NCBI RefSeq assembly: GCF_000315625.1
Contig: NW_005434671.1
Location: 700,188 to 764,187 of the forward strand
Source of the DNA: Guillardia theta CCMP2712
Lineage: Eukaryota > Protista > Cryptophyta
DNA: 64,000 nucleotides
Direction of reading: 5' to 3'
A program made the position numbers and the translations under genes. This document shows, one piece after another, positions 3,627-28,868 of the stretch (position 1 is its first letter; each line of letters starts with the position of its first letter). The notes beneath the pieces are model-generated. The model ran no database searches. It worked only from the letters and a program-made list of their open reading frames with translations, and was not told the origin of the DNA.

Positions 3627-6600
3627 ATGCCTCCTGAGACGAACAAGGACTTCGAGTTCAAGTCCCTCAGCGTGTTCCCCTCAAATCCCCCGTCCTCTGA
3701 GTTCCAGTTTCTGGTCAGAAGGGACGAAGCATGGCACGAGTACGACTTCTTCCGGGCTGAAACGTGGAACTCTCACACCCTGAAATATGAGGAGAGAAAA
3801 AGTGGCATTCGATCCGTCATCACAAAGACCGAGACGAGAGGTCCGTATTCGAGGCCCTTCACCGTGTATTTTGTGCACACCAAGACAGCGTTCAGTGTGA
3901 AGGGAGTTTGCAAACGTTTCAGCGATTTCAAAGAGTTAGACCAAAAGATCAAGAAGCAATTCAAGAACTTCCAATGTCCGTTCCCTCCTGACAAAGTATT
4001 CAACGCTCTGCAACCTGAGTTCGTGAATGAGAGGAAAAAGCAGCTACAACGTTACCTGGACGATGCTCTTGCTGTCCCCGAGATTGCTGCATATCCAGAA
4101 CTACACAGCTTCCTCAATATTCCCGAATATAACGACTACGTCTCCCAGGAGCAGGAACAAGTTAAGAAGGAACAAAAGCGATTCTCGAATCCAGAAAGCG
4201 AAAAACCTGAAACGTATCTCCGTCTGATAGATCACGCCAAGTCATCTGGTGACCGAATCAGCGAAGCACAGGCATTCAATGCCTTGGGCATTTTGTACTG
4301 CGAGATGGGATTGGATCCGCAGGGCATAGAATGCCTTGAAAGCTCGCTCGAGCTGTGCAGGGTGGAAGGTGACCAAGATGGTACTCGCATTCTGTTGTCC
4401 AATCTCGCTTGTGCGCATAACAAGCAAGAGTGTCACTCTCTTGCTCTCTCGTGCTTGAAGGAGTGCGACGATCTGCAAGGCGAAGATGCGCAAGCACAGG
4501 CACAAACCAAGATCAAGTTGGCTCTGACCTCCTCAGCAAACGGCGAGCAGTACGAGGCTGTTGAGTTCTGTTTACGTGCTCTTGAACTGAGTAAGAACCT
4601 CGAGGACCAGGTCCTCGAAGCCACCTGCCTCTTCACACTTGGCACTATATATTACGATGCTGGAGAAGTGCGCCAGGCGGTAGAGGCTTTCGAAAGGTGT
4701 CTGGTTCTGCGAAGGAAGACAAGGAACAAGATTGGTTTAGCTGAAACGCTGAATAAGCTTGGATTGACATACTGTGATATTGGATACGACCTGAGGGCGA
4801 TCGACTACTTTGAACAAAGTCTCGTGATTTGTGAGGATAGTGCAGATCTGCATGGCCAAGCTGTATGCTTGCAACACCTTGGCAATGTGTTCAAGATGCA
4901 GAAAGATAACAAGCTGGCAATAGACTTTTTTGAGCGATGCTTGTCTGTCCGTGAAAAGATAGATGATAAACGTGGATGCGCGGATTGTCATGAGAGGTAT
5001 GCAATTTTTAAAGATTGAGTCCTCCTGATATTCCTTGCAGTCTTGGTTTAGTGTTTTATGGACTAGGGAACTTCAAGATTGCAACAGAACATTATGAAAA
5101 AGCCTTGTCGGTAAGAATCGCTCTAGGAGATAGAGCTGCGCAGAGTGAATGCTACAAGAGCCTTGGAACAGCTTATATTCGGATGGAAGATACAGGAAAA
5201 GCAGTGCAATCCTTTGAACATTGCTTGCAATTGCAAAAACAAATAGGAAATGACAATGGTATTGTGGATGCACTCATTTCCTTGGGGCTTGCATATTTCA
5301 AAGCTGGCGACAATCAGGCTTCAGTCAAACATCTTGAAGATGCCTTGATGTGGTTCGAATTCTTGCCTGAGGAGGATGCTGCTTCCAGCACTGGCAAAGC
5401 TGTGTGTCTTGACCACCTTGGAAACGTTTACAGTAAAATGGGGAGGCCATCAAAGGCGGTTGAGCACTACAAGAAGAGCTTGGTTGTCAAAAGAGAAATC
5501 AATGACATGACCGGCGAAGCTCGTTGTCGAGTTCGCATTGGCCTGGAATATTTGTCGCTTTCCAACCTTCAAGAAGCATATTATGAATTTGAATCCGCGC
5601 TGAAATTGTTCGAAAAGCTTGAAGATGATCATGGCATAGCCATTTGCTACGAAAACTTAGGTCTACTGCTTATTTGTCAATTCGTTCCGCTTGCTTGCTA
5701 AGCCCATGAACAGGCGACACTTTGATGAAGCTGGGTGAGTTGCAAGAAGCGATCATCGCGTATGAGAAGTGTTTACCGATCAAGGTGGGTCCAGTTTCCA
5801 GAGATTATGGAGTCTTATGTTCATGGCAGGTTGAGACGTGGGACAAAGTTGGGGAGGCGCAATGTTTGGACAACTTGGGGCTGGCTCACTACTCTTTGGG
5901 TGATCTGAACAAAGCAGCCGAATATTACGAACAGAGCATGGCGATTTGGAAGTCTGAGGGTGAAAAGCATGCGCTGCTGACGTGTTGTGAGAGTCTAGGG
6001 GGAGTCTGCTTCCACCTGGAAGAGCACCTGCGCTCCATCGAATGCTACGTGCAGTATTTGACCCTGTCGCAAGAGGTTGGAGATGGTTCGTCCGATCACG
6101 AAATCTTGTACAGACTTGGTCTCTCTAATGCTGCCATCGGTGAATACTCCGTCTCCCTTGAGTTTCTCCGACAAGCCATGACTTCGTTCATTGAGCTCGG
6201 AGACATCAAAAACAGAACAGCTTGCCTCCAGAACATTGGTATGGTGCAAGGAAAGCTAGGACAGTTCTTTGAAGGGTTGAAATCACTTGAACAAGCTCTG
6301 AAGCTCAACATGGAAATGGAAGAGCAACAAGGCATTGCCATGTGCTACAAGGAACTTGGTCTCCTCTACTACGATGAAGGGGACAATGAAAAGGCAAAAG
6401 AAAGCTTTGAGAATGCCCTTAGGTATCTGACAGAAGCGCGTGACAAGCCAGAGATTGCTACTTGCAACATGCACATCGGGGGGACTTTGGCAGCTGCTGG
6501 GGAACATAAGGAAGCCATCCAGTACTACACCACTTCCCTTGTTGTTGCAGATACCCTACACAAGGAATGGCCTCTGAAGGCAGAGTGCCTGAAGCAAATG

Positions 6601-9600
6601 GGTTGTTGCCAGGCTGCTCAAATGGATAACGCCGCTGTCCACACGTTCAATCTTGCCCTCGGGCTATGGAAGGAGAAAGGCAATAGAGCCGGTGAGGCAA
6701 ACATCCGGATGAGACTCGCCGAGTGCCACATGGCGTTCAAGCGCTATGAACGAGCTGTCGATGAGGTGAACTTGTGTCTGGAGCTCAGAAACCATCTCGG
6801 CGATCACCGAGGGCAGGCAGAATGCTATTTTCAGCTGGGCAATGCCCACGGAGTGCTTGGAGATTTCATGGCGGCAGAGGAAAGTTACACCAAGTGCATC
6901 GCCCTGAGACGCGAGCACGGCGACAGGTACGGCCTTGCAGATGCCATATCAGCTATCGGGCAGTTGATGGTTGCCAACGGAAAGGCATTGGATGGTCTAG
7001 AAAGTCACAAAGAGGCGCTTGAAATCAGACAAGGGCTGGAAGACAAGGTGGGAATAGCTGAGAGCTACAACAATCTTGCAGTCTGTTACAATCAGACGGG
7101 GGACCAAGAAAGCGCGTTGAGATATTTTCAGAGTTGTCTGGAATTGATGCAGCGGGGAAAAGACTCTGTCAGGGAATGTAAATGCCTACTCAATATGGGT
7201 GCATGCTATGCTGATCAAGGAGACTTTGCAAAAGCGATTGAAATGTTTGAACAAGCCTTGCTGGTCTGCAGGGCGTGCGGGGATTTTGAGGATGAAGCCG
7301 CCTGCTTCTGCAACATCGGAAGTGCAAATTTGCAGTTGGGGCTTATTGAAAAAGCGCTTGAATGCTACGACATTGGACTGAGAATTCTGAAGAAACTTGG
7401 CGACAAGAAGGGAGAAGGAGAATGCTTGCACAACATGGGAGCTGCCAACTTTAACAACGGCAGCACTGAGACAGCAGTGAAGCTCTTCGATGAAGCCTTT
7501 CAGATTTTCCGCTCCTTGAAGGACTCCAAATCAGCCACCATGTGCCTCAACAGCTTGAAATCAGCTTACATCCGACTTGGAGACGCGTCGCAAGCAAGTC
7601 GCTGTGTTCAATTGATGCAGGAGTACTTTCCTGACAGAGACATACAAAGTGTCACTGAGCAGCTGGAGCTGGAGCTGGAGCACGCAAAAGAATCGAAGGA
7701 TCTCGAGCAGCAGGCGCAGCTGCACTTGAAACTGGGAGACTCGTATGAGAAACTCGAGCATCTCGCCATGGAGCACTACGTGGCTGCCCTGGGGATCATG
7801 GAAGAATTCGGAAACCTGGACGGAGTCACAGAGTGTCACAAACGGATCGCCAACATCCAAATAGGGCAGGCAGACTTTGCGGGGGCTCTTGAATCCCTGG
7901 CTCATGCGGTAGCTCGGTTCGAAAGCGACCAGACCTGGAGAGACGGAGGGACTGAGAGCCTGATCTACTACGCCTCCATCTTGTACTCGATCGGCATCTG
8001 CCAACTGGCGTTGAATCAGAACGAGGAGGCCGTGGGTGCGTTCCAGCAGAGCATTTCACTGAGAGAAGAGGCGGAGGACGAGGAAGGCATTGAAGAATGC
8101 CACAATCAGCTAGGTGTTGCCTACTCCAGAATCGGAGACACGCGACGGGCAATGGCGTCTCTCTCTCGAGGTGCTGGTGGTCAATATCTCGCCGTTGAGG
8201 ACACTCCGGGGAAAGTAGTGGGGGTGAGCAGCTTGGCGTCGACTTTGATGACTCTCAAGCAGCATGAAGATGCTCGCAAAACAATCGAAAAGCATGAGAC
8301 AAACCTTGCAATCTACAAGACAAGGCACGACAAGAAGAGTGAAGCAAATTGTCACAACGTCCTTGGTCAGATGTACATTCAGACGCAGCAGCTGAACAAA
8401 GCTGTGGAGGCCTTCGACCTGTGTCAGAAGATCAGAGAGTCTCTCAACGACACGGACGGCATGGAGATTGCGATGAAACGAAAAGGCTGCGCCCTGTATC
8501 TCAGTGGGGACATGAGAAGTGCCGTTGAGGTGTTGGAGGAATACCTCTCCCTAGTCTCTCAGAACGTCGACAGGCGAGTCTTCATTAGCAAGAACTTCGA
8601 GAACTCTCGGCGAGAGGAAGTCGACGCCTGCTGCGTGCTGGGCAGCGCGTGTTACGAGATGGGGGATTTGCCGTCTGCCTCTGAGGCTCTGAAGCGAGCC
8701 CTGGCCCTCTCGCACGAGTCGGGTGATCGAGCTGGTGAAGCAAAGTGCCTGATGGCGTTCGGAGAGATGTACTCCAAGATCAGGGCGAACAAGCGAGCGA
8801 CGGAGCATCTGGAACGAGCTCTCTCGATCTGCATCGAGCTGCAGGACAAGTGCGGGGAAGCCAAGTGCGTCTCCTTGCTGGGCTTCCTGCACTATGCTCG
8901 AGGGGATACGAGCGCGTGCACCAAGTGCCTGGAAGAAGCCCTGGCGCTCTGCAAGCAGAGCCTCATCTCGTCCTCTGAAGCCGAGTGCCTCATGAACATC
9001 GCCGACATCCATTGCCGACAGGGCGACATCGTGCAAGCAAAGGCGCACTATCAACGAGCTTGCAAGCTCTGCAAGGAGCAGCTGGACTCTATGGGAGAGG
9101 CCCGAGCTCTGTGTGGACTGTCAGAGACGGACTTGTCGCTGGGGGACTCGTATGCAGCCATCGACGAGCTACTAGAGTCGCTCGCCATCCGGAAGAAAGT
9201 CGGGGACAGGAAGGGAGAAGCTGAATGTCTCCGTCGTCTCTCCCATGCTTACACACTTGTGGGCAAACTGTCAACCGCCAGGAAAGTCACGGAGCAGGCA
9301 AGACAACTTGCGATGGAGAACGGCATAGCGTTGGATGATGCCAAGGCTGACATGTTGTTGGCGAAGATTGACATGGAGGCGGGAGATCTTGATTCAGCAA
9401 TCGAAGGGCTGCAGCGAGCGAGAGACATGTATGCCAAGACAGTGATGCTGGGAAACAACAAGGTCTTCATCGATCCTCACATGCTGGGGCAGTGCTTAGG
9501 GGAGCTGGGAAACGTCTTCATGTTGGCCTCTAAGTTTGATCGAAGTCACGAGGTGTACGAGCAAGCAGAGCAACTGCTTGAAGCTGCCGAAGAGATAGAC

Positions 9601-19599: not shown

Positions 19600-20938
19600 A
19601 GCGAACGCTCGCTTGAGCCGCGCCATACATTCCGATCTATCAACGTCGCAGCCCCATCAGAGAGTCGCAAGAGAGGAGATGAAGACAAACCTGCTCAACC
19701 TTTTCCTGCTTCCTCCAGGCTCTTCATCGTCACTGAAGTATTCGTCCTCTGCATCTCTGCTCATCTGAGGATCATGTTAGAGGGCAGGAGTCTCCAGATG
19801 TCCGCCGACCCACCTGGTCCAGGTCATCAAGATCGTGATCCTGATCGCAAGACGCGTAATCAAAGTATTGAACATCGTGACCCTGCACAGGTGGGTCAGC
19901 GCGCCATAGCAAACATTGCTCGATACACCTCAAGGAATCTTTCCCTCATGATCTTGTAGAATTCATCTCGCAGGCGCATGCGATCCTCGGCAGAGACGAT
20001 CTCCTGCTTTCCTTGGTCCCCTTTGCTGGATGATTGCTCGAGATCCAAATCCTCGTCGCTGTCTTCCTCCTCGCCTGCGAAAATGCATCAGACCCGCTCG
20101 TGAGAGGCTGCGATGGATTATGAACGAACAGACATGCAGAGATCCAGGTACTGCTAGGTTCATGGATTGAGGGTGAAGAGCTTACAATTTCTTTCGGCGT
20201 CTGCCTCCTTTTCGCGCCGAGTGCGATTCATTTTCCTGTCATAGCTGTGGAGGAGAAAGTCGGCTAACGCCTGGGGAAAGTCAGACATACAGGAGGGGCG
20301 GAAAAGAAGTCAGAGGAAGACGATATGTTGAGAGGATGCTGATGAAACAGGCAGAGGTAGGTGCATTGCGGCAGAGAAAGATATGCGAGGCGAGAGAAGG
20401 GAGAAACGACAAAGAAGAGGTCGACAAAAAACAGGAGTGGAAGGAGGCAGGAAGAGCGAGGGGGGAAACAATAGGGTTCAACAACCTGTCCAGACCAAGA
20501 AGAATCGCGCCAATCGCCTGGTTTAAGACAATGAGGCACTTCCTCTTTGACTCTGCGCCCGTCCTCATCGACTAGAATACAACTGGGTTTGTCGGCGGGA
20601 ACGATCGTAGAAACACCTTCGCCCTCTTCCATGAATTTTCCAATATGTTCGTGGTAAAGGAGTGGAGCCCTTCTTTCCATATTTCCAAGAGAGAAGTACT
20701 CCCCTTCTTCCACGAGCTGGTTCATCTTCTTCAGTCGACGATTCCGAACTGATACGCTCTTTGGCAAGCTCTTGGTTGCACTCGACCTAGGTCCATTCAG
20801 CTTATCGTCTCCTTCGTTCCTCCTCCGCGCCGACCGTTGTGCTTCCTCACTTGCATCGTTGCAATCGGCCCTCCTGTCTTCCTCTTCGTCTCTCCCCATC
20901 TCTGCATCGCCGCTTTCCACCATCTCGCTATCCGGCAT
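19600..20938 (-). CDS. CCDC97: CCDC97 (DUF2052) homolog, multi-exon; 3' end approximate
   Basis: N-terminal motif VRNRRLKKMNQLVEEGEYFSLGNMERRAPLLYHEHIG and C-terminal motif LRDEFYKIMRERFLE-GHDVQYFDYASCDQDHDLDDLDQ-MSRDAEDEYF match the CCDC97 family signature. Confidence 0.8.
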
Positions 20939-21229
20939 CCTTGGCAAACCTCCTACACGGGCAATTAATGTTATTATCAACACTTTATGGAAACTCTCAT
21001 ATATTGGGTAAGTTTTACAACTACTTTTAAGACAGCAGTACCTGGTTTGTACCAATCAGTTTTATTTAATTTTACAAGATCTGTCTTACTGTACCGGTCA
21101 TATATACTGCAAAACATCTGTGGGGGGTCATCATATTTACAACTATAAGCAGTATAAGTGGTAAATGTTTTGTAAATCATTATACAAATATATTGAAATC
21201 TATATTTAGTACTGCATTCACGAACAGTT

Positions 21230-21900
21230 GCGTTTCAGTCCCCCCGACACTGACTCCTAAAGTTGCCGGGATGACTCCGACTCCCTCCGACGCCTTCTTG
21301 GACTCCCGGAGTCAGGCCTCGGACTCCCACCTACACACGGACTCGAGTCATCCCACCAGGCCGGGCTGTAACACTCCGACTCGTCGGTCCGGCGGCCGGG
21401 GAAGGCGGCCCGGGCCTGGCCGCGTGACTGTCAGCCGGGGCAAGGCTCGGACTGAGCGCAGTGACCCAGCGCCGGGTAGCCGCCGGGTCGGACTGTCCCG
21501 GCCCGGTCCGGACCCGGCGCTCCCGGCCACAGCTGAGCGCTTCTTTATATGATCCCGGCCCCTCCGACAGTCGCACTCCCGGAGTCCCATTCCCGGGCCT
21601 CCCGACTCCGTACGGTCGCCGTGACTTCCGCCATACATACTCGACGCTTGAACCTACGGTAACTAGGACCCCAACCAGGCTCCGAGGCTCCGGATGCTCC
21701 GCCTACTCTGGGTGGACGTATCGGGTCGAATTTCGGAACGCGGACTGTGCCCGGTGAGTCACTCGGACGGCGGGCCGAACTTCCGAATACCGGCCGCACG
21801 AACTCCGAATACCCAGCGGTCTCTGTGACGGTGCTTCATCGGATCAACTCTCTGGCAGTGCAGTCAGGCTCATTGAGGACGCGGCCGTCCCGGCCTCCGA
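21230..21900. repeat. Long CpG-rich palindromic-word block inside the MULE
   Basis: About 670 bp of GACTCCG, ACTCGG, CCGGG, GTGACT, ACTGAG words with no convincing coding frame. Confidence 0.55.
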
Positions 21901-22050
21901 CTCCATGCGTGAGCCATCATGTCACATCCACCTCTGCCAAGTTGCAACAAGACCGTTTTACTGAAGACCTAGGTTCATGCAAACGACACCAGAATTGAGC
22001 ATCACATCAAAGATAGACTGTACGCTAAGGTCTAACTTCTGCGTTTTGTT

Positions 22051-25000
22051 TCACTTTATACTTGCTCCGCCACCGGCACGATACACTTCACTCAGCAGAT
22101 TGCCTATTCGCATGCGAATGTCAGGTATATCCTTCTGACAAAAACTCGTTGCTGGGTTGCGGCCCGAAGCTATACAATCCGCTATCGCACATACAAATAC
22201 TCCGCACGACGATCCGTCTGTCTGTCGCGGTACCTGTGTCCGGGATCAGTGTATACAACACGCCGTTTGGCAATTGATGTGGTCACCAGATCTGACGTAA
22301 ACGAGTACACGTGTTGCCATTTAACCCTCAGTTTGTCTTGCATCCATGCTTCCAATAGCTGGTTTCCGGTAGATTGAGCTTCATTCAGTTGACGCTGCCA
22401 TTCCATCTCTACAAAACCTGCGCGGTACATGTACGTGTTACAGCGACAATCCAATGCGCACCATGAACACGTCTCACATGCTATGTCCTTGGTACACTCC
22501 TTGTGCACGAGTTTCATGGAGTCATATAACCTGGTAACAACCGTCAATGACACTGTATGTCGCTGCTATGTCACAATTTCATTACGTCACTGCCACATGA
22601 CCAATGGATCTCAGATCAATGGTAACGAGGCCCCAATGCTTCTGATCTCTGAGTACTCCTCCCATCCTCTCCATGGTTGGGAGTTCGCTGGTTGTATCGT
22701 TACCTTCCACCCTGCTGGCCAGTTGCACAGAAAAGATAGGTATTAACACGATGTCAGTGGTTGGCCACCATATATCCTTGATCCACTTCCGGCAACCCGC
22801 GTGTACGGAATTTGTCACCTGCAACGAATTTATCCCTCACACTGCAATCATCACTGGCACGTTACATTCTTCACGCACCTTATCTGCATCTCCACAGAGA
22901 GCGATTTCCTGAATCAACTTGGTGTAAAAGTATGTCCCACAGCAATGCACACTGATTCCTGATGCCTTGCGGGCCTGTATGACACACAAAAACGCATCTA
23001 TGATATCTCCTTTCAACCATCCACCATTCCTCACTGCATCCAAGTCTTCCAATGTAATGTCCGACTGGGAAATCATGTGTGTGCCCAACGAGACCATGTT
23101 CTTGACTTGGTTCACCACTACTGTATCCAGCCCAATGAATATTTCTCTCAGATATGCGCATTGTACTTTGGGCATCCCGTCATTTCCAGCTGTTATCTGG
23201 TTCTCCTCCGCATCTGTCTGCACTCCTACTGAAGTACCAGAAGCTCGAAGATTCTTCTGGGTTCTGCTGGATACATGGGACTCACAAGGAATGTCAGCAG
23301 TGTCTGATGTGCACGAACGTTTGTTATGTCCGATAGCTTTGCATATCTTACATGTCTTCTTCAAATTTCCTTTCACAGTGTAAAATTTGCCATCCACAAA
23401 CCCTGGCACTGCTTCCCCATGGAGTCGGATCGTTCCTTCTTCGTTGCGAAGGATCACTTGTTTACAATCATGGACACGCTTTCTTTTGGATCCTTGTCTC
23501 TTGGAGATTTTCTTGCCTTTTTCCCCATGTGATGGAATGCGACCAGGGAGGGAGCCAGGACAGGGAGCCTTGCTGGGCGGAGGAAGATAAGACTTGTCTG
23601 TGTGTTGCGGGCGGGGGACATCATCATTGTGTGGGGAATATCCAATACGGAATGTGCCTGAGTGTAACACGGCGTCGAGAAAAGTGTCTGTCAACCATAT
23701 ATCATCGTACAACTGCCGGACCATATCTTCATGTGGCTTCGCCAATCTTTGGTTGTATGCCTGGAATGCGGCGATTGCATGTTGACATGGTCTTCCATTG
23801 ACCTGCCAAAGACAACACAAAGAGCAGGTTTTTTTGGACAAGTCGACATGGCAGTCGGAGGACTCTTGGTTACGTTTGCCTGCCAAGATAACCACTGTGT
23901 CAGAGACGGAAGTAGCGTACAAATGTCTCGCTTGAGTTTGGAATATGACATGCTCTTCGTTGACTGCATCACTGATAAACATATCGGTGTAGATGCTAGC
24001 AGGCAGTTCATTCCTTCTTCGTGATATTTCATTGGCCAGATTCCGCATGTCATTCAAGCATGTCACCCACGCGCATGTAACCTTCTGGAGAAATCCCAAC
24101 GGGTGGTCATTCGTGGCGAGCATTCCGCGGAGACGAGAGTTTTCACTTTCACTGACATTGTTGCTCCGAATCCCATAGGTACGAATGCCATGAAATTCTT
24201 TCAGAACTTGGGCCTCCCCCTGCATGTGTTCGGCAAGAAACACCCTCGACTACCAGGGTTGTGGCAAGAAACACCCTCGACTACCAGGGTTGTTGTCACA
24301 ATATAACTTCATCCAATTCGGTAAGATCTTGAATGTTTCCTCGTACTGTTCCCAAGTACCATATTCGAGGACAAAGCGTGCTTTCCAAACGTTGGCAGGG
24401 GAGGAATCAATACCGTGGGATGCTTTGAGCTGACGCAATAGTTCCTTCACCGTCATTCTCTTGCCACCACCACTTGAGCTTCCAGAGGACATTGAGATCA
24501 TTTCCCGAAAAGGATGGAATTGAAGCAGGAACTTCACAGAAGCTTTGCCTGAGAACGTGCACATGTACTCATCGTGCTGCAGATGGCTGTCTGTAATGTT
24601 GACAGTGAAGAGAGGTACCATACTGCGTGATTTTTTCACTACGACACTGTACCTGCCAAGGTGGTTCCCTGTTAGTCAAGCTTTGCAAATCAATGACGGT
24701 GGAGATTTACCTGCACTTGGGCGAAAGACACTGTAGGGTATATGTTTCGAAGAGCGCCTCAAAATTTGGAATGCAACGAACCCCTCTATTGCAGAACTCG
24801 AAGTTGACACCTTTGATGTAAGCAGTGCATTCTTGCCTACTCTCCCAAACCTTGCCGGTGAACAAGTCAGCGTGATTCAGAAGCAGGCCGCCCTGGCAAG
24901 TTGCGTGAACACCATGCCCTGCATCCGCCGTGTTGTGCCCACGAGATGCAGATGAGCCCTCACAATGATCCTTCAAGTTTGAGCAGGAACCGCCAGAGAA

Positions 25001-25381
25001 TGTCGTTGCCGGGGTGCCAACGGGGGAGGAATCAATGCCTTTGCCAACTGGAAAGGGTGATCCCGAGGGTTTGGTAGTAGAATCTGAAGTATGCAGGACG
25101 TCAGCTGGTTGTGTAAGCCGCCTGGAAGCAGTAGTAGGACACAAAATGCTATACAGCTTGTTCACCCTGGTGAATAACGGTGTAGTGTCGCTGACGGGCA
25201 CACCAAGCAAAGAGTATCCTTGACGAATCACCTCATTCATCGGGACTGTCCGATCCAGTTGCAGTTGGAATCGAATAGAATCAATTCTGTCTACAAGAGG
25301 AATTGTTTCATACTGGTCATAGTCATGTGAGTCGTGTTCAAGACAGGATGATTCAACTCTCCCCTGCTGCCAGGCAGCCAT
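22051..25381 (-). pseudogene. MURA-like transposase fused to SWIM, CCHC knuckle and Ulp1 (peptidase C48); DDE core missing and frame broken
   Basis: MuDR-type DNA-binding region (LFTGKVWESRQECTAYIK...CLSPKC...HLQHDEYMC), YGTWEQYEETFKILPNWMKLYCDNNPGS, then almost directly RTYGIRSNNVSESENSRLR, SWIM CSLCCLWQVNGRPCQHAIA, knuckle CKICKAIGHNKRSC, and Ulp1 WLKGDIIDAFL...FYTKL...HWGL...LYDSM...VPRQTDGSSCGVFVC. Stop TGA at 22051-22053. Confidence 0.85.
24232..24293 (+). repeat. Perfect 31-bp tandem duplication at the transposase deletion junction
   Basis: ggcaagaaacaccctcgactaccagggttgt at 24232-24262 and 24263-24293. Confidence 0.95.
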
Positions 25382-27119
25382 CACTGTGTTTATGCGAGGT
25401 GACACCCCTCCAATGCCTTAGGGCCAGCCACTAGAAGAAGGGGGTGGATGGAGCAATGAAGGGGTGACAGTGACACTATGAAGGGGTGGGTACAAGTACC
25501 CTGCATCATCCCTATCAAACCCCTGGGTTTAAGGGGGTGATCAGTTTCTTGGAGGGGTCGTGGAGTTGGGGTGGGTACATATAGTATCTGATTATTAACC
25601 TGTACTAGTACCCCTCATCTCCTCTCTGTACGATAGTAATAGGGGTGGGGTGTGCTGTATAATCAGATTATTGTTGTGATCGTACAAAATACTATAAGGT
25701 AATTGTATAAATCTCGCTGTGTAAAATATGAACGTTTCAATTAAATGACATATAAAACATTGATGTATCCAAAAAGTGCCATACAATTTCAAAATACATG
25801 TTTCTCTTGCAGTATTTTGTGAAAGAATTTGATAAAAGTGTTGATAATAACATTAGTTGCCCCTCCTACACCAGACCCCACCCTATGGACCCAATCTCTC
25901 CACATGGAACCACCCCTCGTTGTATTTATCATAATTATACACAAAAAATCATAAATGTACCCAATGTTATAGATATTTTTGACCGAAGTTGATAAAACAA
26001 TTGTAAGAATAGATATATGAGCTGGTCTGTCCGAGTAAAATGTTTTTGTCGCAGTTTATATCATTATAAATATTATATATAATTTTAAACTTCACAAAAC
26101 ATTATTAAAGTCACGTTTTAAGTCTGGCAGTCAGACGTGTGAGAGGGTGGGGTGTTGCACTTCAGGAAGACAGGGGTGGGGGTGGGTGGGCGGCTAAACC
26201 GACCTTGTAGGGGTGCCTTCAGGCTTCTCAATCGACGCAAGGGGGGGTGGGATAGGTAAGGTGGCGGAGGGGGTGGTGAGTGGTAAACTCGAGGAGGGAA
26301 GGGTGGGGTTGAATGCGGGTGGGGGAGTGAGGGTTTTTGCGGACGGCGTAATCGATGTTGGTGGGAGGGAGTAAAATGGTGGAAGGGGAGGCAGGGAGAG
26401 AGGAGAGCGAGGAGGAGAGCGAGGATAGAAAGGAAAGGGATCAGTTGGCAAAAAGGGAGGGGGCGGGGGCAAGAGGGAGGGAGGGAGGGAGGGAGGGAGG
26501 GAGGGAAGAGATGAGAGGTGTTTACCGGGCAAAGGAGGCGAGATCTGCACTATGGTACAGGGGGAGCGGAATGACATGAAAGGAGAGAATGAGATGATAT
26601 GAAGACAGCCAGGGAATGAGATAGATGAGGGAAGTTGTTTTAGATTTGTTCAAAGGACACGGACTATGGAGGTGAGAATACAACTTGAGAGGAGGGTTGG
26701 AAGGGGTTTATGTGGTAAAAGTTTTACGCAGACGCAGTGAGATAGATGCAATGGAGAAGGAACGTAATAAGAGGGGCAAGAGGGATGGGGGAGAGAATTA
26801 TACGAGAGAGGCCAGGGTTATGAATGACAGAACGATCTGGAGCAGGCTACTCATATCGCTGGATTTGAACCAGACAGACTTGCACCAACAAATGCATAGA
26901 GTAGATCTATGTTGATCCGATCGTTTTTGAATCTATCATTCATGTCGGATGATTTTTAAGAAATGGAAGATGATACGAGCAAGAAACATGTTCGTTGATT
27001 ATATATGTTTTATTTTGCACACCTACTCACTGAAGGTTTGCTGACTTCCCGTTACAGTTCGAACTTTCGTTAGAAAACGGCATAGATGGAACTTCAATTT
27101 ATCTAAAGCTTTCTGGCAA

Positions 27120-28868
27120 ATGCTTCACAACGCTTATTTTTACCACCATGCACGTCCTGAAAAGAGACATCAAGTTGCAAGGGCGTGTGCTCGTTGTCGA
27201 AGGCTAAAATTGAAATGCGTGGAGAAATTCCCATGCTCAAGGTGCGAAAGGAGGATTCTCGAGACTCATCTCGAACAGAAGCAGATCAATGGCATATGCG
27301 CAGACTGCGAGGAGGCAATGCGTGGAAACGAACGTTTCCGGATTGTTCTTTCCAATGAATACGGGGGACCAGAGAGGCCGATCATTTTTCGAGGCAACTG
27401 CATCGAGCTGACGAATCAGAAGAAGAAAGCTGCTCAACTGATCCTACCTTTGTTGCGAGTTCCGTGTGCTTACACGATGATCCATCGGTACAGTGAGGCG
27501 GGATTCTCCGTGAGGGATATTTGCAACATCTTCAATCACATCCCAGCTGAGCTTGCGAGTGTGCTCGAAGAAGGGTTGAGGGCCATGCAAAGGAATGCGC
27601 CATTGGTCCTTCCTGTGGCAGGTGAGAAGAGAATGCCGGGAAGTGAAAATGCGATGCAATTCCATGAAAAGAGACTGCTCGACAACATCAAAGACTTTGG
27701 GTGCGTTCGGCTGGAGTGGAATAAAGAGGGGGAGCGAGAATCAGTATACTTCAACGACGTATTTGCGCTGCTGGCAGGAGCACATAAAGAGGAGCTCTTG
27801 TCAAGAGCTGCATCTTGCGAGCTTCCGCTGCCTATGACAGAATTGGATCTTATCTGCACCATTCTGGATGACGTGCTGCGTTGTGGTTCGTCAACGATCA
27901 CTCGCTATGTCAGGTGGCGCGTCGGATTTGTGAATGGAGGGCAAGGGCAAGCAGCATTCCTGAAATGGACGAGGAACAAGAGCATTTCACCGGCTCAGGG
28001 GATCGAAAACGCGCTGCACAGTTTCTCTTTCGTTACCCCAGAGGAGTATGATTGGGCAATGCACACGACTCCCGAGCTGTGTCGACCTCTCATGTGGGAG
28101 CTCGGAGATTTCCGCTCTGCCTCTTCCTGTCTCAATGATATTGGAAAAGATTGGCACGATATGCGCATCTCCGATTTGCAGAGCTCAGATCACGGTCGGC
28201 ATCTGCTCTCGAGGCTCACGGAGTTGGTGAGATTGAAGTTCGCTCCGTTTGTGAGGGCGGCCAACATGGTTCAGATGGAACAGTCAGAGGGCCATAGACA
28301 TGTCCCTGCGTGCCCTCAAACAGTCGGAGCAGCTCAACTTTGCGAGATGCCGCTGGCGGTGCCTCATCCTACGGCGGTCATGATTCAGGGGTGGATGCAG
28401 GCATCAGCGATCTGCCAGGGCGAGAGGGACCTTCAGTTTGTGTCGCCGCATCCTTGCGGACCAGCGGCGTCACAGCTGGGCTGCGGACCAGCGGCGTCAC
28501 AGCTGGGCTGCGCATCGCAGGCCATGGAGACGAACGCACTGAGTGCAGGTATCTTGCCTTGCATCCTCCAGAACCCGCACGACGCAGAGAAGTTCGTCTC
28601 TGATATGTCAGCAAACGTGCGACAGAACGTCTCTGATATGTCAGCAAACGTGCGACAGAACGATCTGAATTCCTTCGACTCTATCAACCACAAGTGGCCC
28701 ATCAAGAACGACAAAGAGGAACACACAAGCCAACGCGACGTCTCACATTACACAGTTTCATCCGAGGCAAACATGGCTCTGAATCATTCTGTTGCATTTT
28801 CTGTCCTCAAATCAACAGAGCTGCGGCTGGAAAGGTCGCATGTCTTCCTGTCTCCCAGGAATGTTTAG
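27120..28868 (+). CDS. Zn(II)2Cys6 (Gal4-like) transcription factor-like protein; a short 3' exon to ~29020 is possible
   Basis: RHQVARACARCRRLKLKCVEKFPCSRC gives C-x2-C-x6-C-x5-C-x2-C; the sixth Cys is atypically distant. Central globular domain; C-terminal 27-bp and 33-bp coding duplications. Confidence 0.7.
   Translation: MLHNAYFYHHARPEKRHQVARACARCRRLKLKCVEKFPCSRCERRILETHLEQKQINGICADCEEAMRGNERFRIVLSNEYGGPERPIIFRGNCIELTNQKKKAAQLILPLLRVPCAYTMIHRYSEAGFSVRDICNIFNHIPAELASVLEEGLRAMQRNAPLVLPVAGEKRMPGSENAMQFHEKRLLDNIKDFGCVRLEWNKEGERESVYFNDVFALLAGAHKEELLSRAASCELPLPMTELDLICTILDDVLRCGSSTITRYVRWRVGFVNGGQGQAAFLKWTRNKSISPAQGIENALHSFSFVTPEEYDWAMHTTPELCRPLMWELGDFRSASSCLNDIGKDWHDMRISDLQSSDHGRHLLSRLTELVRLKFAPFVRAANMVQMEQSEGHRHVPACPQTVGAAQLCEMPLAVPHPTAVMIQGWMQASAICQGERDLQFVSPHPCGPAASQLGCGPAASQLGCASQAMETNALSAGILPCILQNPHDAEKFVSDMSANVRQNVSDMSANVRQNDLNSFDSINHKWPIKNDKEEHTSQRDVSHYTVSSEANMALNHSVAFSVLKSTELRLERSHVFLSPRNV

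What the first reader, a model, noticed from the sequence alone, without database searches (positions are those of the whole stretch)
20950..25871. MULE transposon with both ends present that carries a SUMO/Ubl-specific Ulp1 protease with an intact catalytic triad
Seen: 28-bp TIRs (1 mismatch) and a perfect 9-bp TSD bound a 4.9-kb element. After removing three short GT-AG introns, the C-terminal part reads through SWIM and CCHC into a peptidase C48 domain with His (HWGL, 22636-22638), Asp (YDS, 22521-22523) and Cys (QTDGSSCG, 22204-22206). Known: MULEs make 9-bp TSDs, Ulp1-bearing MULEs (KAONASHI type) are described from plants, and SUMOylation contributes to transposon silencing in several eukaryotes. 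Inference: a cryptophyte-type MULE family with the protease fused to the transposase may use deSUMOylation against host silencing. The ORF track splits it into four pieces and misses the catalytic Cys exon.
Basis: partly seen in the sequence, partly recalled or inferred. Interest (0 to 1): 0.8.

Follow-up and report, generated by a model that had tools for sequence, protein, structure and literature searches.

The report
Deleted Mutator transposon carrying Ulp1 protease
This is a real Mutator-like jumping gene in the alga Guillardia theta whose transposase gene ends in an intact-looking SUMO-type (Ulp1) protease, but this copy has lost its cutting (DDE) domain, and the protease-transposase combination is already known from other organisms.

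Summary
The element spans window 20959-25862. Its 28-nt terminal inverted repeats (TIRs) differ at one base, and a perfect 9-bp target-site duplication (TSD), CTCCTACAC, flanks it.

Spliced transcriptome contigs show five GT-AG introns (four inside the protease part, not three). Raw RNA reads show a poly(A) site at 21942.

Three corrections:
- This copy is non-autonomous. A 5,908-bp relative (98-99.7% identical) on a metagenome contig has 944 bp more, encoding the MULE DDE core.
- In the window that stretch is replaced by a 31-bp filler duplication with an in-frame TAG. It splits the message into a 357-aa ORF and a 648-aa SWIM-CCHC-Ulp1 ORF.
- The DDE stretch is absent from the whole G. theta assembly.

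The fusion is not unique. Two further Guillardia MULE lineages (about 30% identical) keep the same architecture and catalytic residues. The literature already reports Ulp1 domains in Mutator transposases of hydra, lancelet and plants.

It is not KAONASHI-type: it has TIRs and the protease is fused. The anti-silencing role is untested.

The scan noted a similar MULE-Ulp1 fusion elsewhere in this genome.

The parts
20950..20958 (.). Left copy of the 9-bp target-site duplication, CTCCTACAC
   Evidence: Identical to 25863-25871.
20959..20997 (+). Left terminal inverted repeat, at the 3' side of the gene
   Evidence: 39-nt arm, 85% complementary. The first 28 nt have 1 mismatch. The pattern occurs only 5 times in the genome.
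20998..21941 (.). Untranscribed subterminal region. It is GC-rich (about 67%) between 21200 and 21900 and holds clustered GACTCC motifs.
   Evidence: No RNA depth in X1, X3 or X20. Composition. Five GACTCC copies lie in 21252-21327. It is also present in L035 and in the old C64 end.
21942..22233 (-). Last exon: C48 oxyanion Gln and catalytic Cys (PRQTDGSSCG), stop codon at 22051-22053, 3' UTR, and the poly(A) site at 21942
   Evidence: PF02902 positions 160-213, 28.9 bits, on 22081-22239. Raw RNA reads of X20 carry a poly-T loose end at 21942.
22234..22286 (-). Intron (53 nt, GT-AG)
   Evidence: Skipped in the spliced contigs of X1 and X3 and in 2 raw RNA reads of X20.
22287..22417 (-). C48 exon, the variable insert between Asp and Cys
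   Evidence: Contig pieces. Open in frame.
22418..22477 (-). Intron (60 nt, GT-AG)
22478..22530 (-). C48 exon with the catalytic Asp (LYDSM, 22521-22523)
   Evidence: Aligns with the YYDSM of SENP1.
22531..22585 (-). Intron (55 nt, GT-AG)
22586..22818 (-). C48 exon with DIVLIPI and the catalytic His-Trp (KHWGL, His at 22636-22638)
   Evidence: One contiguous piece in the RNA contigs. The public model P0002 wrongly splices 19 residues out of it. HW aligns with the HW of SENP1.
22819..22878 (-). Intron (60 nt, GT-AG)
22879..24652 (-). Large exon. It holds the end of ORF1, the filler with TAG, the start of ORF2 (ATG at 24223-24225), the post-DDE MULE motif GIRSNNVSESENSRLR, SWIM, CCHC, a linker, and the N-terminal part of C48 (GGWLKGDIIDAF).
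23752..23850 (-). SWIM zinc finger
   Evidence: PF04434, 29.6 bits, E 4.8e-7, residues 132-164 of the 468-aa ORF.
23311..23352 (-). CCHC zinc knuckle, CKICKAIGHNKRSC
   Evidence: Conserved in family B and family C.
24232..24293 (.). Two exact tandem copies of a 31-bp unit. They mark the 944-bp deletion of the DDE core and contain the in-frame TAG at 24250-24252.
   Evidence: A DNA contig of X13 spans the junction.
24653..24710 (-). Intron (58 nt, GT-AG)
24711..25399 (-). First exon: 5' end of the RNA contigs at about 25399, ATG at 25379-25381, and the N-terminal putative DNA-binding region. It carries a 114-bp in-frame deletion at about 25024 relative to L035 and C116.
25400..25823 (.). Subterminal region upstream of the gene (presumed promoter), with clustered GGGGTG motifs
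   Evidence: No RNA depth. Motif positions 25441-25652.
25824..25862 (-). Right terminal inverted repeat
25863..25871 (.). Right copy of the 9-bp TSD, CTCCTACAC

Best explanation
Window 20959-25862 is a recently inserted, internally deleted (non-autonomous) copy of a cryptophyte Mutator-like element (MULE) in Guillardia theta. In its full-length form (5.9 kb, seen on a metagenome contig), one intron-rich gene can encode a protein of about 1,270-1,290 aa. That protein has an N-terminal DNA-binding region, a MULE DDE core, a SWIM finger, a CCHC knuckle and a C-terminal Ulp1/SENP-type (C48) cysteine protease. In the window copy, 944 bp holding the DDE core were lost and replaced by a 31-bp filler duplication. 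This is the kind of scar left by interrupted gap repair after excision. The filler carries an in-frame TAG. The copy is still transcribed, spliced at five GT-AG introns and polyadenylated. Its message carries a 357-aa N-terminal ORF and a 648-aa SWIM-CCHC-Ulp1 ORF. Inferred, not shown: in the intact protein the protease is a SUMO-type (Ubl) isopeptidase, delivered by the DNA-binding parts of the transposase to the element's own chromatin or transpososome. There it would remove SUMO marks that support silencing or that regulate repair. The window copy could move only with transposase supplied in trans. No such source is visible in this assembly.
For: TIRs, TSD and rarity of the TIR pattern.
SWIM.
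C48: the exon scores 28.9 bits and the public model P0002 scores 51.1 bits, E 2e-13. The best solved relatives are SENP1, SENP5 and SENP2, with His-Trp, Asp and Gln...Cys aligned. The Atlas structural matches have TM 0.70-0.72 to SENP2/Ulp1 clusters.
RNA: spliced contigs with 0 mismatches in two runs, five CT..AC joints, and a poly-T loose end at 21942 in raw RNA reads. The frame analysis gives two ORFs in one frame split by a single TAG.
Full-length relative L035: it matches exactly from TIR to TIR and has 944 bp and 116 bp more than the window. The extra exon hits PF10551 MULE at E 7e-5, and the equivalent exon of family B passes the Pfam cut-off at 30.5 bits. An open spliced frame of 1,264-1,292 aa exists through all domains.
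The DDE stretch is absent from G000.
Families B and C keep the same domain order and His/Asp/Gln/Cys at about 30% identity.
Detectable relatives are almost only from Guillardia and Hanusia.
Against: No DDE domain is present in the window itself.
The MULE profile hit on L035 is below Pfam's cut-off, because the domain is split by introns.
The N-terminal region gives no DBD_Tnp_Mut or FAR1 hit exon by exon.
L035 shows no TSD (GCGTCCACT on one side, CTACTGATC on the other). Its two flanks resemble different repeats of G000, so it may be a chimeric short-read assembly, and its organism is unknown.
The introns of the DDE segment are modelled, not RNA-verified: 40 alternative solutions fit.
The RNA contigs break at the 31-bp tandem repeat (24261/24264), so continuity of one transcript across it is inferred from equal depth only.
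ORF2 lies behind a 357-aa ORF and may not be translated.
Protease activity, substrate and any link to silencing are untested.
Confidence: 0.85

Rival explanations
1. The Ulp1 part is a passively carried, transduplicated host fragment (Pack-MULE style) with no role for the element. Its intact look is due to the youth of the copy.
For: Gene capture by MULEs is common in plants (PMC13317346). This copy is young, 98-99.7% identical to L035.
Against: Three lineages only about 30% identical overall keep the domain in frame at the same C-terminal position. All three keep His-Trp, Asp, Gln and Cys, and the Cys exon is 47-55% identical among them. The domain shows no close similarity to the host Ulp1-like genes on C10 and C17, where the best match has E 3e-4 over 72 aa. 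No near relative was found in the word-indexed database of 5.8 billion sequences.
Confidence: 0.07
2. The locus is a domesticated host gene (annotated as GUITHDRAFT_132208, ubiquitin-like protease) rather than a transposon copy.
For: It is annotated as a gene. It is abundantly transcribed and correctly spliced. It lacks the DDE core.
Against: It has near-perfect TIRs and a perfect 9-bp TSD. It is 98-99.7% identical to a DDE-bearing element in another sample at a different site. The loss of the DDE is a fresh deletion with a filler and an in-frame stop, not a streamlined gene.
Confidence: 0.04
3. The C48 domain is a self-processing protease that cuts the long fusion protein, in the manner of clan CE viral proteases, rather than a deSUMOylase acting on host chromatin.
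For: Clan CE includes adenoviral, poxviral and asfarviral processing proteases (general knowledge). The fusion protein is very long, about 1,270-1,290 aa.
Against: The best sequence and structure matches are SENP1/2/5 and Ulp1, not viral proteases. Both tunnel tryptophans (GGWLKGD and HWGL) typical of Ubl-tail recognition are kept. No conserved Gly-Gly site was seen in the linker, but this was not searched systematically.
Confidence: 0.07
4. This particular copy makes no protease at all. The message is a dead, stop-interrupted transcript, and only ORF1, a DNA-binding fragment without catalytic parts, is translated. That fragment might act as a repressor of the family.
For: A TAG at 24250-24252 lies about 1.1 kb into the mRNA, followed by four more introns. 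Truncated transposases that keep DNA binding act as repressors in other systems, such as the KP elements of P (general knowledge).
Against: Transcript contig depth is high and even on both sides of the stop (X3: about 280-390). That is not what strong nonsense-mediated decay would give. ORF2 has its own ATG 24 nt downstream of the stop, and reinitiation or an internal start is possible.
Confidence: 0.4

Closest known systems
Mutator (MuDR-type) transposases with a C-terminal Ulp1 domain from hydra and lancelet (Repbase entries cited in Bao, Kapitonov and Jurka 2010, PMC2836005)
   Same: A DNA transposon of the Mutator superfamily in which the Ulp1/C48 domain is part of the transposase protein.
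   Different: The host lineage is different (a cryptophyte alga). No detectable sequence relatives were found outside Guillardia, Hanusia and a few metagenome or algal hits. I had no sequences of the animal elements, so common origin versus independent acquisition was not tested.
KAONASHI / KIU-carrying VANDAL MULEs of Arabidopsis, and the Ulp1-bearing MULEs of melon, rice and grapevine (PMC13317346, PMC2836005)
   Same: A MULE that carries a conserved Ulp1 protease domain. A link to escape from silencing has been proposed for the VANC/KIU genes.
   Different: The plant elements are non-TIR MULEs, and Ulp1 sits in a separate VANC-derived gene, one of three genes (PMC13317346). Here there are clear TIRs, a single gene, and the domain is fused after SWIM-CCHC.
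Ginger1 DNA transposons with C-terminal Ulp1 or OTU domains (PMC2836005)
   Same: A cut-and-paste transposase with a C-terminal Ubl or ubiquitin protease, and introns in the transposase gene.
   Different: Ginger1 has a Gypsy-integrase-type DDE and 4-bp TSDs. This element has MULE, SWIM and CCHC domains and a 9-bp TSD.
Internally deleted non-autonomous derivatives of DNA transposons (Ds from Ac, dMu or rMu from MuDR, KP from P)
   Same: An internal deletion removes catalytic parts and leaves the ends intact. There is short filler or duplicated DNA at the junction, as left by interrupted gap repair (general knowledge).
   Different: Here the derivative is still strongly transcribed and keeps an open protease ORF.
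SENP1/SENP2/Ulp1 SUMO proteases (PDB 2iyc, 1tgz, 6dg4)
   Same: C48 fold with aligned His-Trp, Asp and Gln...Cys.
   Different: Identity is low. There is an insert of about 20 residues between Asp and Cys. The domain is attached to transposase parts instead of the host-type N-terminal targeting regions.

Membership tests
Mutator/MULE superfamily of DNA transposons | Target-site duplication of about 9 bp (8-11) | tested here: met
   Perfect 9-bp CTCCTACAC on both sides.
Mutator/MULE superfamily of DNA transposons | Terminal inverted repeats | tested here: met
   27 of 28 bases match, extending to 39 nt at 85%. The pattern occurs 5 times in 87 Mb and 0 times in the control.
Mutator/MULE superfamily of DNA transposons | DDE transposase core matching the MULE profile (PF10551) in this copy | tested here: not met
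   No PF10551 hit on any ORF of the window. The 944 bp that encode the core in L035 are deleted here and absent from G000.
Mutator/MULE superfamily of DNA transposons | DDE core matching PF10551 in the full-length relative and sister families | tested here: met
   The L035 exon scores 23.6 bits, E 7.2e-5, below the 27.6 cut-off because it is only part of the domain. The orthologous family B exon scores 30.5 bits, above the cut-off, and is 48% identical to the L035 exon. The distant hit P0016 has MULE at 56 bits plus SWIM.
Mutator/MULE superfamily of DNA transposons | SWIM zinc finger downstream of the DDE core | tested here: met
   PF04434, 29.6 bits.
Mutator/MULE superfamily of DNA transposons | N-terminal WRKY/GCM1-type DNA-binding domain (DBD_Tnp_Mut or FAR1 profiles) | tested here: inconclusive
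   No profile hit exon by exon. The candidate region (CTAYIKGVNFEF...CLSPKC / ...HLQHDEYMC) is split by intron 24653-24710, and the joined search was left out. The region is conserved among families A, B and C.
Peptidase C48 (Ulp1/SENP) | Profile match above Pfam's cut-off | tested here: met
   Last exon: 28.9 bits. Public model P0002: 51.1 bits, E 2e-13, profile positions 27-213 of 217.
Peptidase C48 (Ulp1/SENP) | Catalytic His, Asp and Cys plus the oxyanion Gln at the aligned positions | tested here: met
   HW, YDS and PRQTDGSSCG align with the HW, YYDSM and PQQMNGSDCG of SENP1 2iyc. Codons verified.
Peptidase C48 (Ulp1/SENP) | Clan CE fold | tested here: met
   The Atlas model of P0002 residues 270-516 has TM 0.70-0.72 to SENP2-like and Ulp1 clusters. 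Both sides are predicted models, and P0002 lacks about 39 residues through wrong splicing.
Peptidase C48 (Ulp1/SENP) | Isopeptidase or processing activity on SUMO (or NEDD8) | not testable with these tools
   Needs a biochemical assay.
KAONASHI (KI/KIU) MULEs of plants | Non-TIR (VANDAL-type) element | tested here: not met
   Clear TIRs are present here. The definition is from PMC13317346.
KAONASHI (KI/KIU) MULEs of plants | Ulp1 domain in a separate VANC-derived gene, not in the transposase | tested here: not met
   Here SWIM, CCHC and C48 are in one RNA-supported ORF. The definition is from PMC13317346.

The most novel reading that the evidence does not exclude
Cryptophytes of the Guillardia/Hanusia lineage harbour an old clade of Mutator elements that has kept a transposase-Ulp1 fusion through deep divergence. 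There are at least three lineages at about 30% identity. An unrelated LINE family in the same genome independently carries an N-terminal C48 domain. Together these would mean that removal of SUMO (or another Ubl) is a general, selected counter-silencing or repair-steering strategy of mobile elements in this genome. Deletion derivatives such as the window copy could supply protease, or a DNA-binding repressor, in trans.
Probability: 0.2. Interest if true: 0.7.

Novelty: new member of a known kind. Interest (0 to 1): 0.4.

Why it matters
It corrects a public gene model: GUITHDRAFT_132208 is the tail of a broken transposon gene, with two wrongly placed introns. It shows that a Guillardia theta MULE is still transcribed and accurately spliced. 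It extends the recurring pairing of DNA-transposon transposases with Ubl proteases to cryptophytes. Because three diverged lineages keep the catalytic residues, the system is a reasonable place to test what a transposase-linked Ulp1 does. That question has been open since these domains were first seen in plant and animal MULEs and in Ginger elements. The finding itself, however, is an expected kind of element, and this copy is defective.

Tried and rejected
- Pfam on the five mechanical ORFs gave only SWIM. The C48 domain is too fragmented by introns to score, except for the last exon in the six-frame genome scan.
- The word-indexed protein search with the 468-aa ORF and with the C48 part of P0002 found only the locus itself and its metagenome twin.
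- The exhaustive phmmer search found 16 proteins. None showed a C48 Pfam hit when scanned on their own. For P0003 the C48 exons lie downstream on its contig.
- I asked whether C116 is a processed retrocopy, because its limits are close to the transcript limits. Rejected: it retains the introns.
- I asked whether L035 marks a polymorphic insertion with an empty site in G000. Its flanks match only repeats, at 83% and 91%, on two different contigs, and it shows no TSD, so nothing can be concluded.
- I looked for a second, convergent gene in the GC-rich 21200-21900 region, in the way MuDR has mudrB. There is no RNA there, and the frames are low-complexity and broken in the window.
- Subterminal motif clusters (GACTCC on the left, GGGGTG on the right) are modest and differ between the two ends. 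I do not claim them as binding sites.
- A literature search for PRJEB17505 and for Guillardia MULEs found nothing relevant.
Exons were searched one by one by reference or through the public model P0002. Joined frames were only checked for openness inside scripts.
Full report
**Organism and locus.** The window is G000:C3:700188-764187 of an 87.1-Mb, 669-contig genome. The only database proteins that match the locus are its own product, named GUITHDRAFT_132208 of Guillardia theta CCMP2712 (P0002), and a metagenome twin (P0001). The genome is therefore the cryptophyte G. theta.

**The observation.**
- The sequence and the repeat finder show an inverted repeat with arms 20959-20997 and 25824-25862: 39 nt, 85% complementary, and the first 28 nt differ at one base.
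- The nine bases outside each arm are identical: CTCCTACAC at 20950-20958 and 25863-25871.
- The 28-nt terminal pattern, with up to three mismatches, occurs five times in the whole genome and never in the reversed control. The pair in the window is therefore not a chance match.
- The 468-aa ORF 22837-24243 has a SWIM finger at 29.6 bits and the knuckle CKICKAIGHNKRSC.

**The protease domain.**
- Exon by exon, only the last exon is long enough to score. A six-frame scan of the genome with PF02902 hits window 22081-22239 at 28.9 bits, above the 20.7-bit cut-off.
- The public model P0002, which strings the exons together, scores 51.1 bits (E 2e-13) over profile positions 27-213 of 217.
- Against solved structures its C-terminal 247 residues find SENP1 (E 1e-8), SENP5, an Ulp1-like SUMO protease and SENP2. 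HW aligns with HW, YDS with YYDSM, and PRQTDGSSCG with PQQMNGSDCG. The triad and the oxyanion Gln are therefore in place.
- The ESM Atlas model of the same stretch matches SENP2-like and Ulp1 clusters at TM 0.70-0.72.
- Both tryptophans that line the Gly-Gly tunnel in SENPs are present, in GGWLKGD and in HWGL. The role of those positions is general knowledge of the family.

**Gene structure from RNA.** I laid four runs on 20900-25920.
- Two transcriptome-like runs (X1, X3) contain contigs identical to the window that skip five stretches.
- With the stated offsets these are minus-strand GT-AG introns at 24653-24710, 22819-22878, 22531-22585, 22418-22477 and 22234-22286. The last joint is also seen in two raw RNA reads of X20.
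- X20 reads end in a poly-T loose end at 21942, which is a poly(A) tail on the minus-strand RNA.
- The contigs reach 25399 at the 5' side.
- No intron-less DNA copy exists in the assembly, so the spliced contigs are RNA.
- Four introns, not three, separate the SWIM/CCHC exon from the Cys exon.
- The RNA shows 22586-22818 as one exon. The public model wrongly removes 19 residues (WPTTDIVLIPIFSVQLASR) there and about 20 more (VRNGGWLKGDIIDAFLCVIQ) upstream.
- The contigs break at 24261/24264, exactly between two identical 31-mers. I take this as a k-mer assembly effect, because the depths on both sides are alike.

**This copy is a deletion derivative.**
- The spliced message (3,172 nt) has two ORFs in the same frame. 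One is 357 aa (25381 down to the TAG at 24250-24252) and the other is 648 aa (ATG at 24225 down to the stop at 22051-22053).
- The TAG lies in a 31-bp unit that is present twice in tandem, at 24232-24262 and 24263-24293.
- P0001 is encoded on a 6,259-bp contig of an ENA metagenome assembly (L035). L035 matches the window from TIR to TIR (L035 172-6079) at 97.7-99.7% identity. It has 944 bp more at exactly this point and 116 bp more (114 bp net, in frame) at window position about 25024.
- In L035 the single 31-mer is followed by exons reading FLANGAILHMVKCCGIRLLGQDYTH..., ...LTIMTDRGNAILSGVENALPHANIVYCSVHL... and so on.
- One of these exons hits PF10551 (MULE) at E 7.2e-5. The score is below the cut-off because only a third of the domain lies on that exon.
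- The 944 bp have no counterpart anywhere in G000 apart from 61 bp in a relic on C116. A DNA contig of run X13 spans the junction in the window.
- A deletion with a short duplicated filler is what interrupted gap repair after excision leaves in Ac/Ds, P and Mu (general knowledge).
- In L035, the five RNA-supported introns transferred from the window plus four modelled GT-AG introns give an uninterrupted frame of 1,264-1,292 aa. That frame contains all conserved blocks from the N-terminus to the Cys box. The exact borders of two of the modelled introns are ambiguous.

The joined sequences were only checked for openness inside scripts. All searches were done exon by exon by reference or with P0002.

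**Copies in the genome.**
- Besides the window copy, G000 holds a TIR-less relic on C116 (86-90% identical, with a different internal deletion) and a 78% fragment on C258.
- It also holds short end fragments on C101 and C68, and three solo left ends on C138, C150 and C64.
- None of these has both ends, so further TSDs cannot be scored.
- L035 itself shows no TSD. Its flanks resemble two different G000 repeats at 83% and 91%. For a multi-copy element in a short-read metagenome assembly this may be a chimeric join, and I draw no conclusion from it.

**The fusion is conserved.**
- The exhaustive search of 1.84 billion representatives with the 468-aa ORF found only 16 proteins. Those with names come from G. 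theta, Hanusia phi, one chlorophyte transcriptome and metagenomes. Eleven have SWIM and two have MULE domains.
- The best hit, P0003 (29-34% identical), lies on contigs (L045, L046) with the same exon order as family A:
  - an N-terminal block;
  - DDE exons, with PF10551 at 30.5 bits, above the cut-off;
  - SESEN-type, SWIM and CCHC motifs;
  - a WV.DE.IN.F block;
  - VHWSL, MYDP and KQTDSVSCG.
- G000 has at least four copies of this family B, with stops.
- A third lineage, on C9, has the same order with THWSMIVVDL, LYDSMN and MQQDSCSCG.
- Retention of the catalytic residues at the same place in three lineages that are otherwise about 30% identical argues for selection on the protease as part of the transposase gene.
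- The domain is not a recent copy of the host's Ulp1-like genes on C10 and C17, nor of the LINE-borne C48 domain.

**Function.**
- Shown: it is a bounded, duplicated-target insertion. It makes a transcribed, spliced, polyadenylated message. It has a C48 domain with complete catalytic machinery in frame with SWIM and CCHC. The DDE core has been lost from this copy.
- Inferred:
  - that the intact protein is both transposase and Ubl protease;
  - that the substrate is SUMO, since the best matches are SENP1/2/5 rather than NEDD8-specific enzymes, although specificity cannot be read from this;
  - that tethering to the element's DNA lets it remove SUMO from chromatin or repair factors.
- Bao et al. 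(PMC2836005) proposed a role in transposition or repair for such domains. The 2026 review (PMC13317346) notes that the function of Ulp1 in plant MULEs is still unknown.
- From this copy, ORF1 (the DNA-binding part only) is the product most likely to be made. Whether ORF2 is translated is open.

**Comparison and novelty.**
- Ulp1 domains in Mutator elements are reported from hydra, lancelet, Arabidopsis, maize, rice and melon. That paper aligns the Ulp1 domains of 'Mutator TPases' (PMC2836005).
- KAONASHI/KIU elements are non-TIR VANDALs with Ulp1 in a separate VANC-derived gene (PMC13317346). This element fails both features, so it is not of that type.
- I found no paper on MULEs of Guillardia.
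- The finding is a new, lineage-restricted member of a known kind. This copy is defective.

Noticed in passing
L042 (G000:C23:35-4384, minus strand), and more than 15 other places listed: A non-LTR retrotransposon family has one 1,449-aa ORF with an N-terminal Peptidase_C48 domain (30 bits), an APE-type endonuclease and a reverse transcriptase. This is a second, unrelated mobile-element class in G. theta that carries an Ulp1-like protease.
   Followed up: partly
L057 (G000:C9:431000-440999), about 4640-8900, minus strand: This is a third MULE-SWIM-CCHC-Ulp1 lineage, with long open exons and the motifs THWSM, LYDSMN and QQDSCSCG. TIRs were not examined.
   Followed up: partly
L045, L046 (metagenome contigs); G000 C105:244604-245935, C154:100146-101477, C367:5787-7115, C41:418180-419523: Family B of the same clade, about 30% identical to the window element. 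The G000 copies carry 1-2 stop codons. The metagenome copies look open.
   Followed up: partly
L040 (G000:C150:6555-6702) and L041 (G000:C64:24189-24579): Two solo left ends of the element are truncated after 148 and about 407 nt and run into short (TTTAGGG)n tracts. TTTAGGG is the telomere repeat at contig ends here. Short interstitial tracts are common near contig ends, so these fragments lie in subtelomeric mosaic DNA.
   Followed up: partly
window 21919-22027: The 3' UTR and poly(A) region of the element is 73-82% similar to part of a dispersed repeat, tandem in places (period about 1.2 kb on C84), found on at least ten contigs. Its nature is unknown.
   Followed up: partly
window 20264-21055 (minus strand) and 20900-21036: The element sits about 200 bp upstream of a CCDC97-like gene (PF09747, 54.8 bits). 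An 872-nt contig of the presumed RNA run X1 runs from that gene across the TSD into the first 78 nt of the element. This suggests read-through or a start inside the element.
   Followed up: no
window 27120-28868 (plus strand): A 582-aa ORF with a fungal-type Zn(2)-Cys(6) binuclear cluster domain (26 bits) lies 1.25 kb from the right end of the element.
   Followed up: no
window 22586-23060, compared with protein P0002: The public gene model GUITHDRAFT_132208 starts at the ATG behind the filler stop and skips most of the SWIM finger. It also removes two conserved C48 segments that the RNA contigs keep. The annotation of this locus is wrong in several places.
   Followed up: yes
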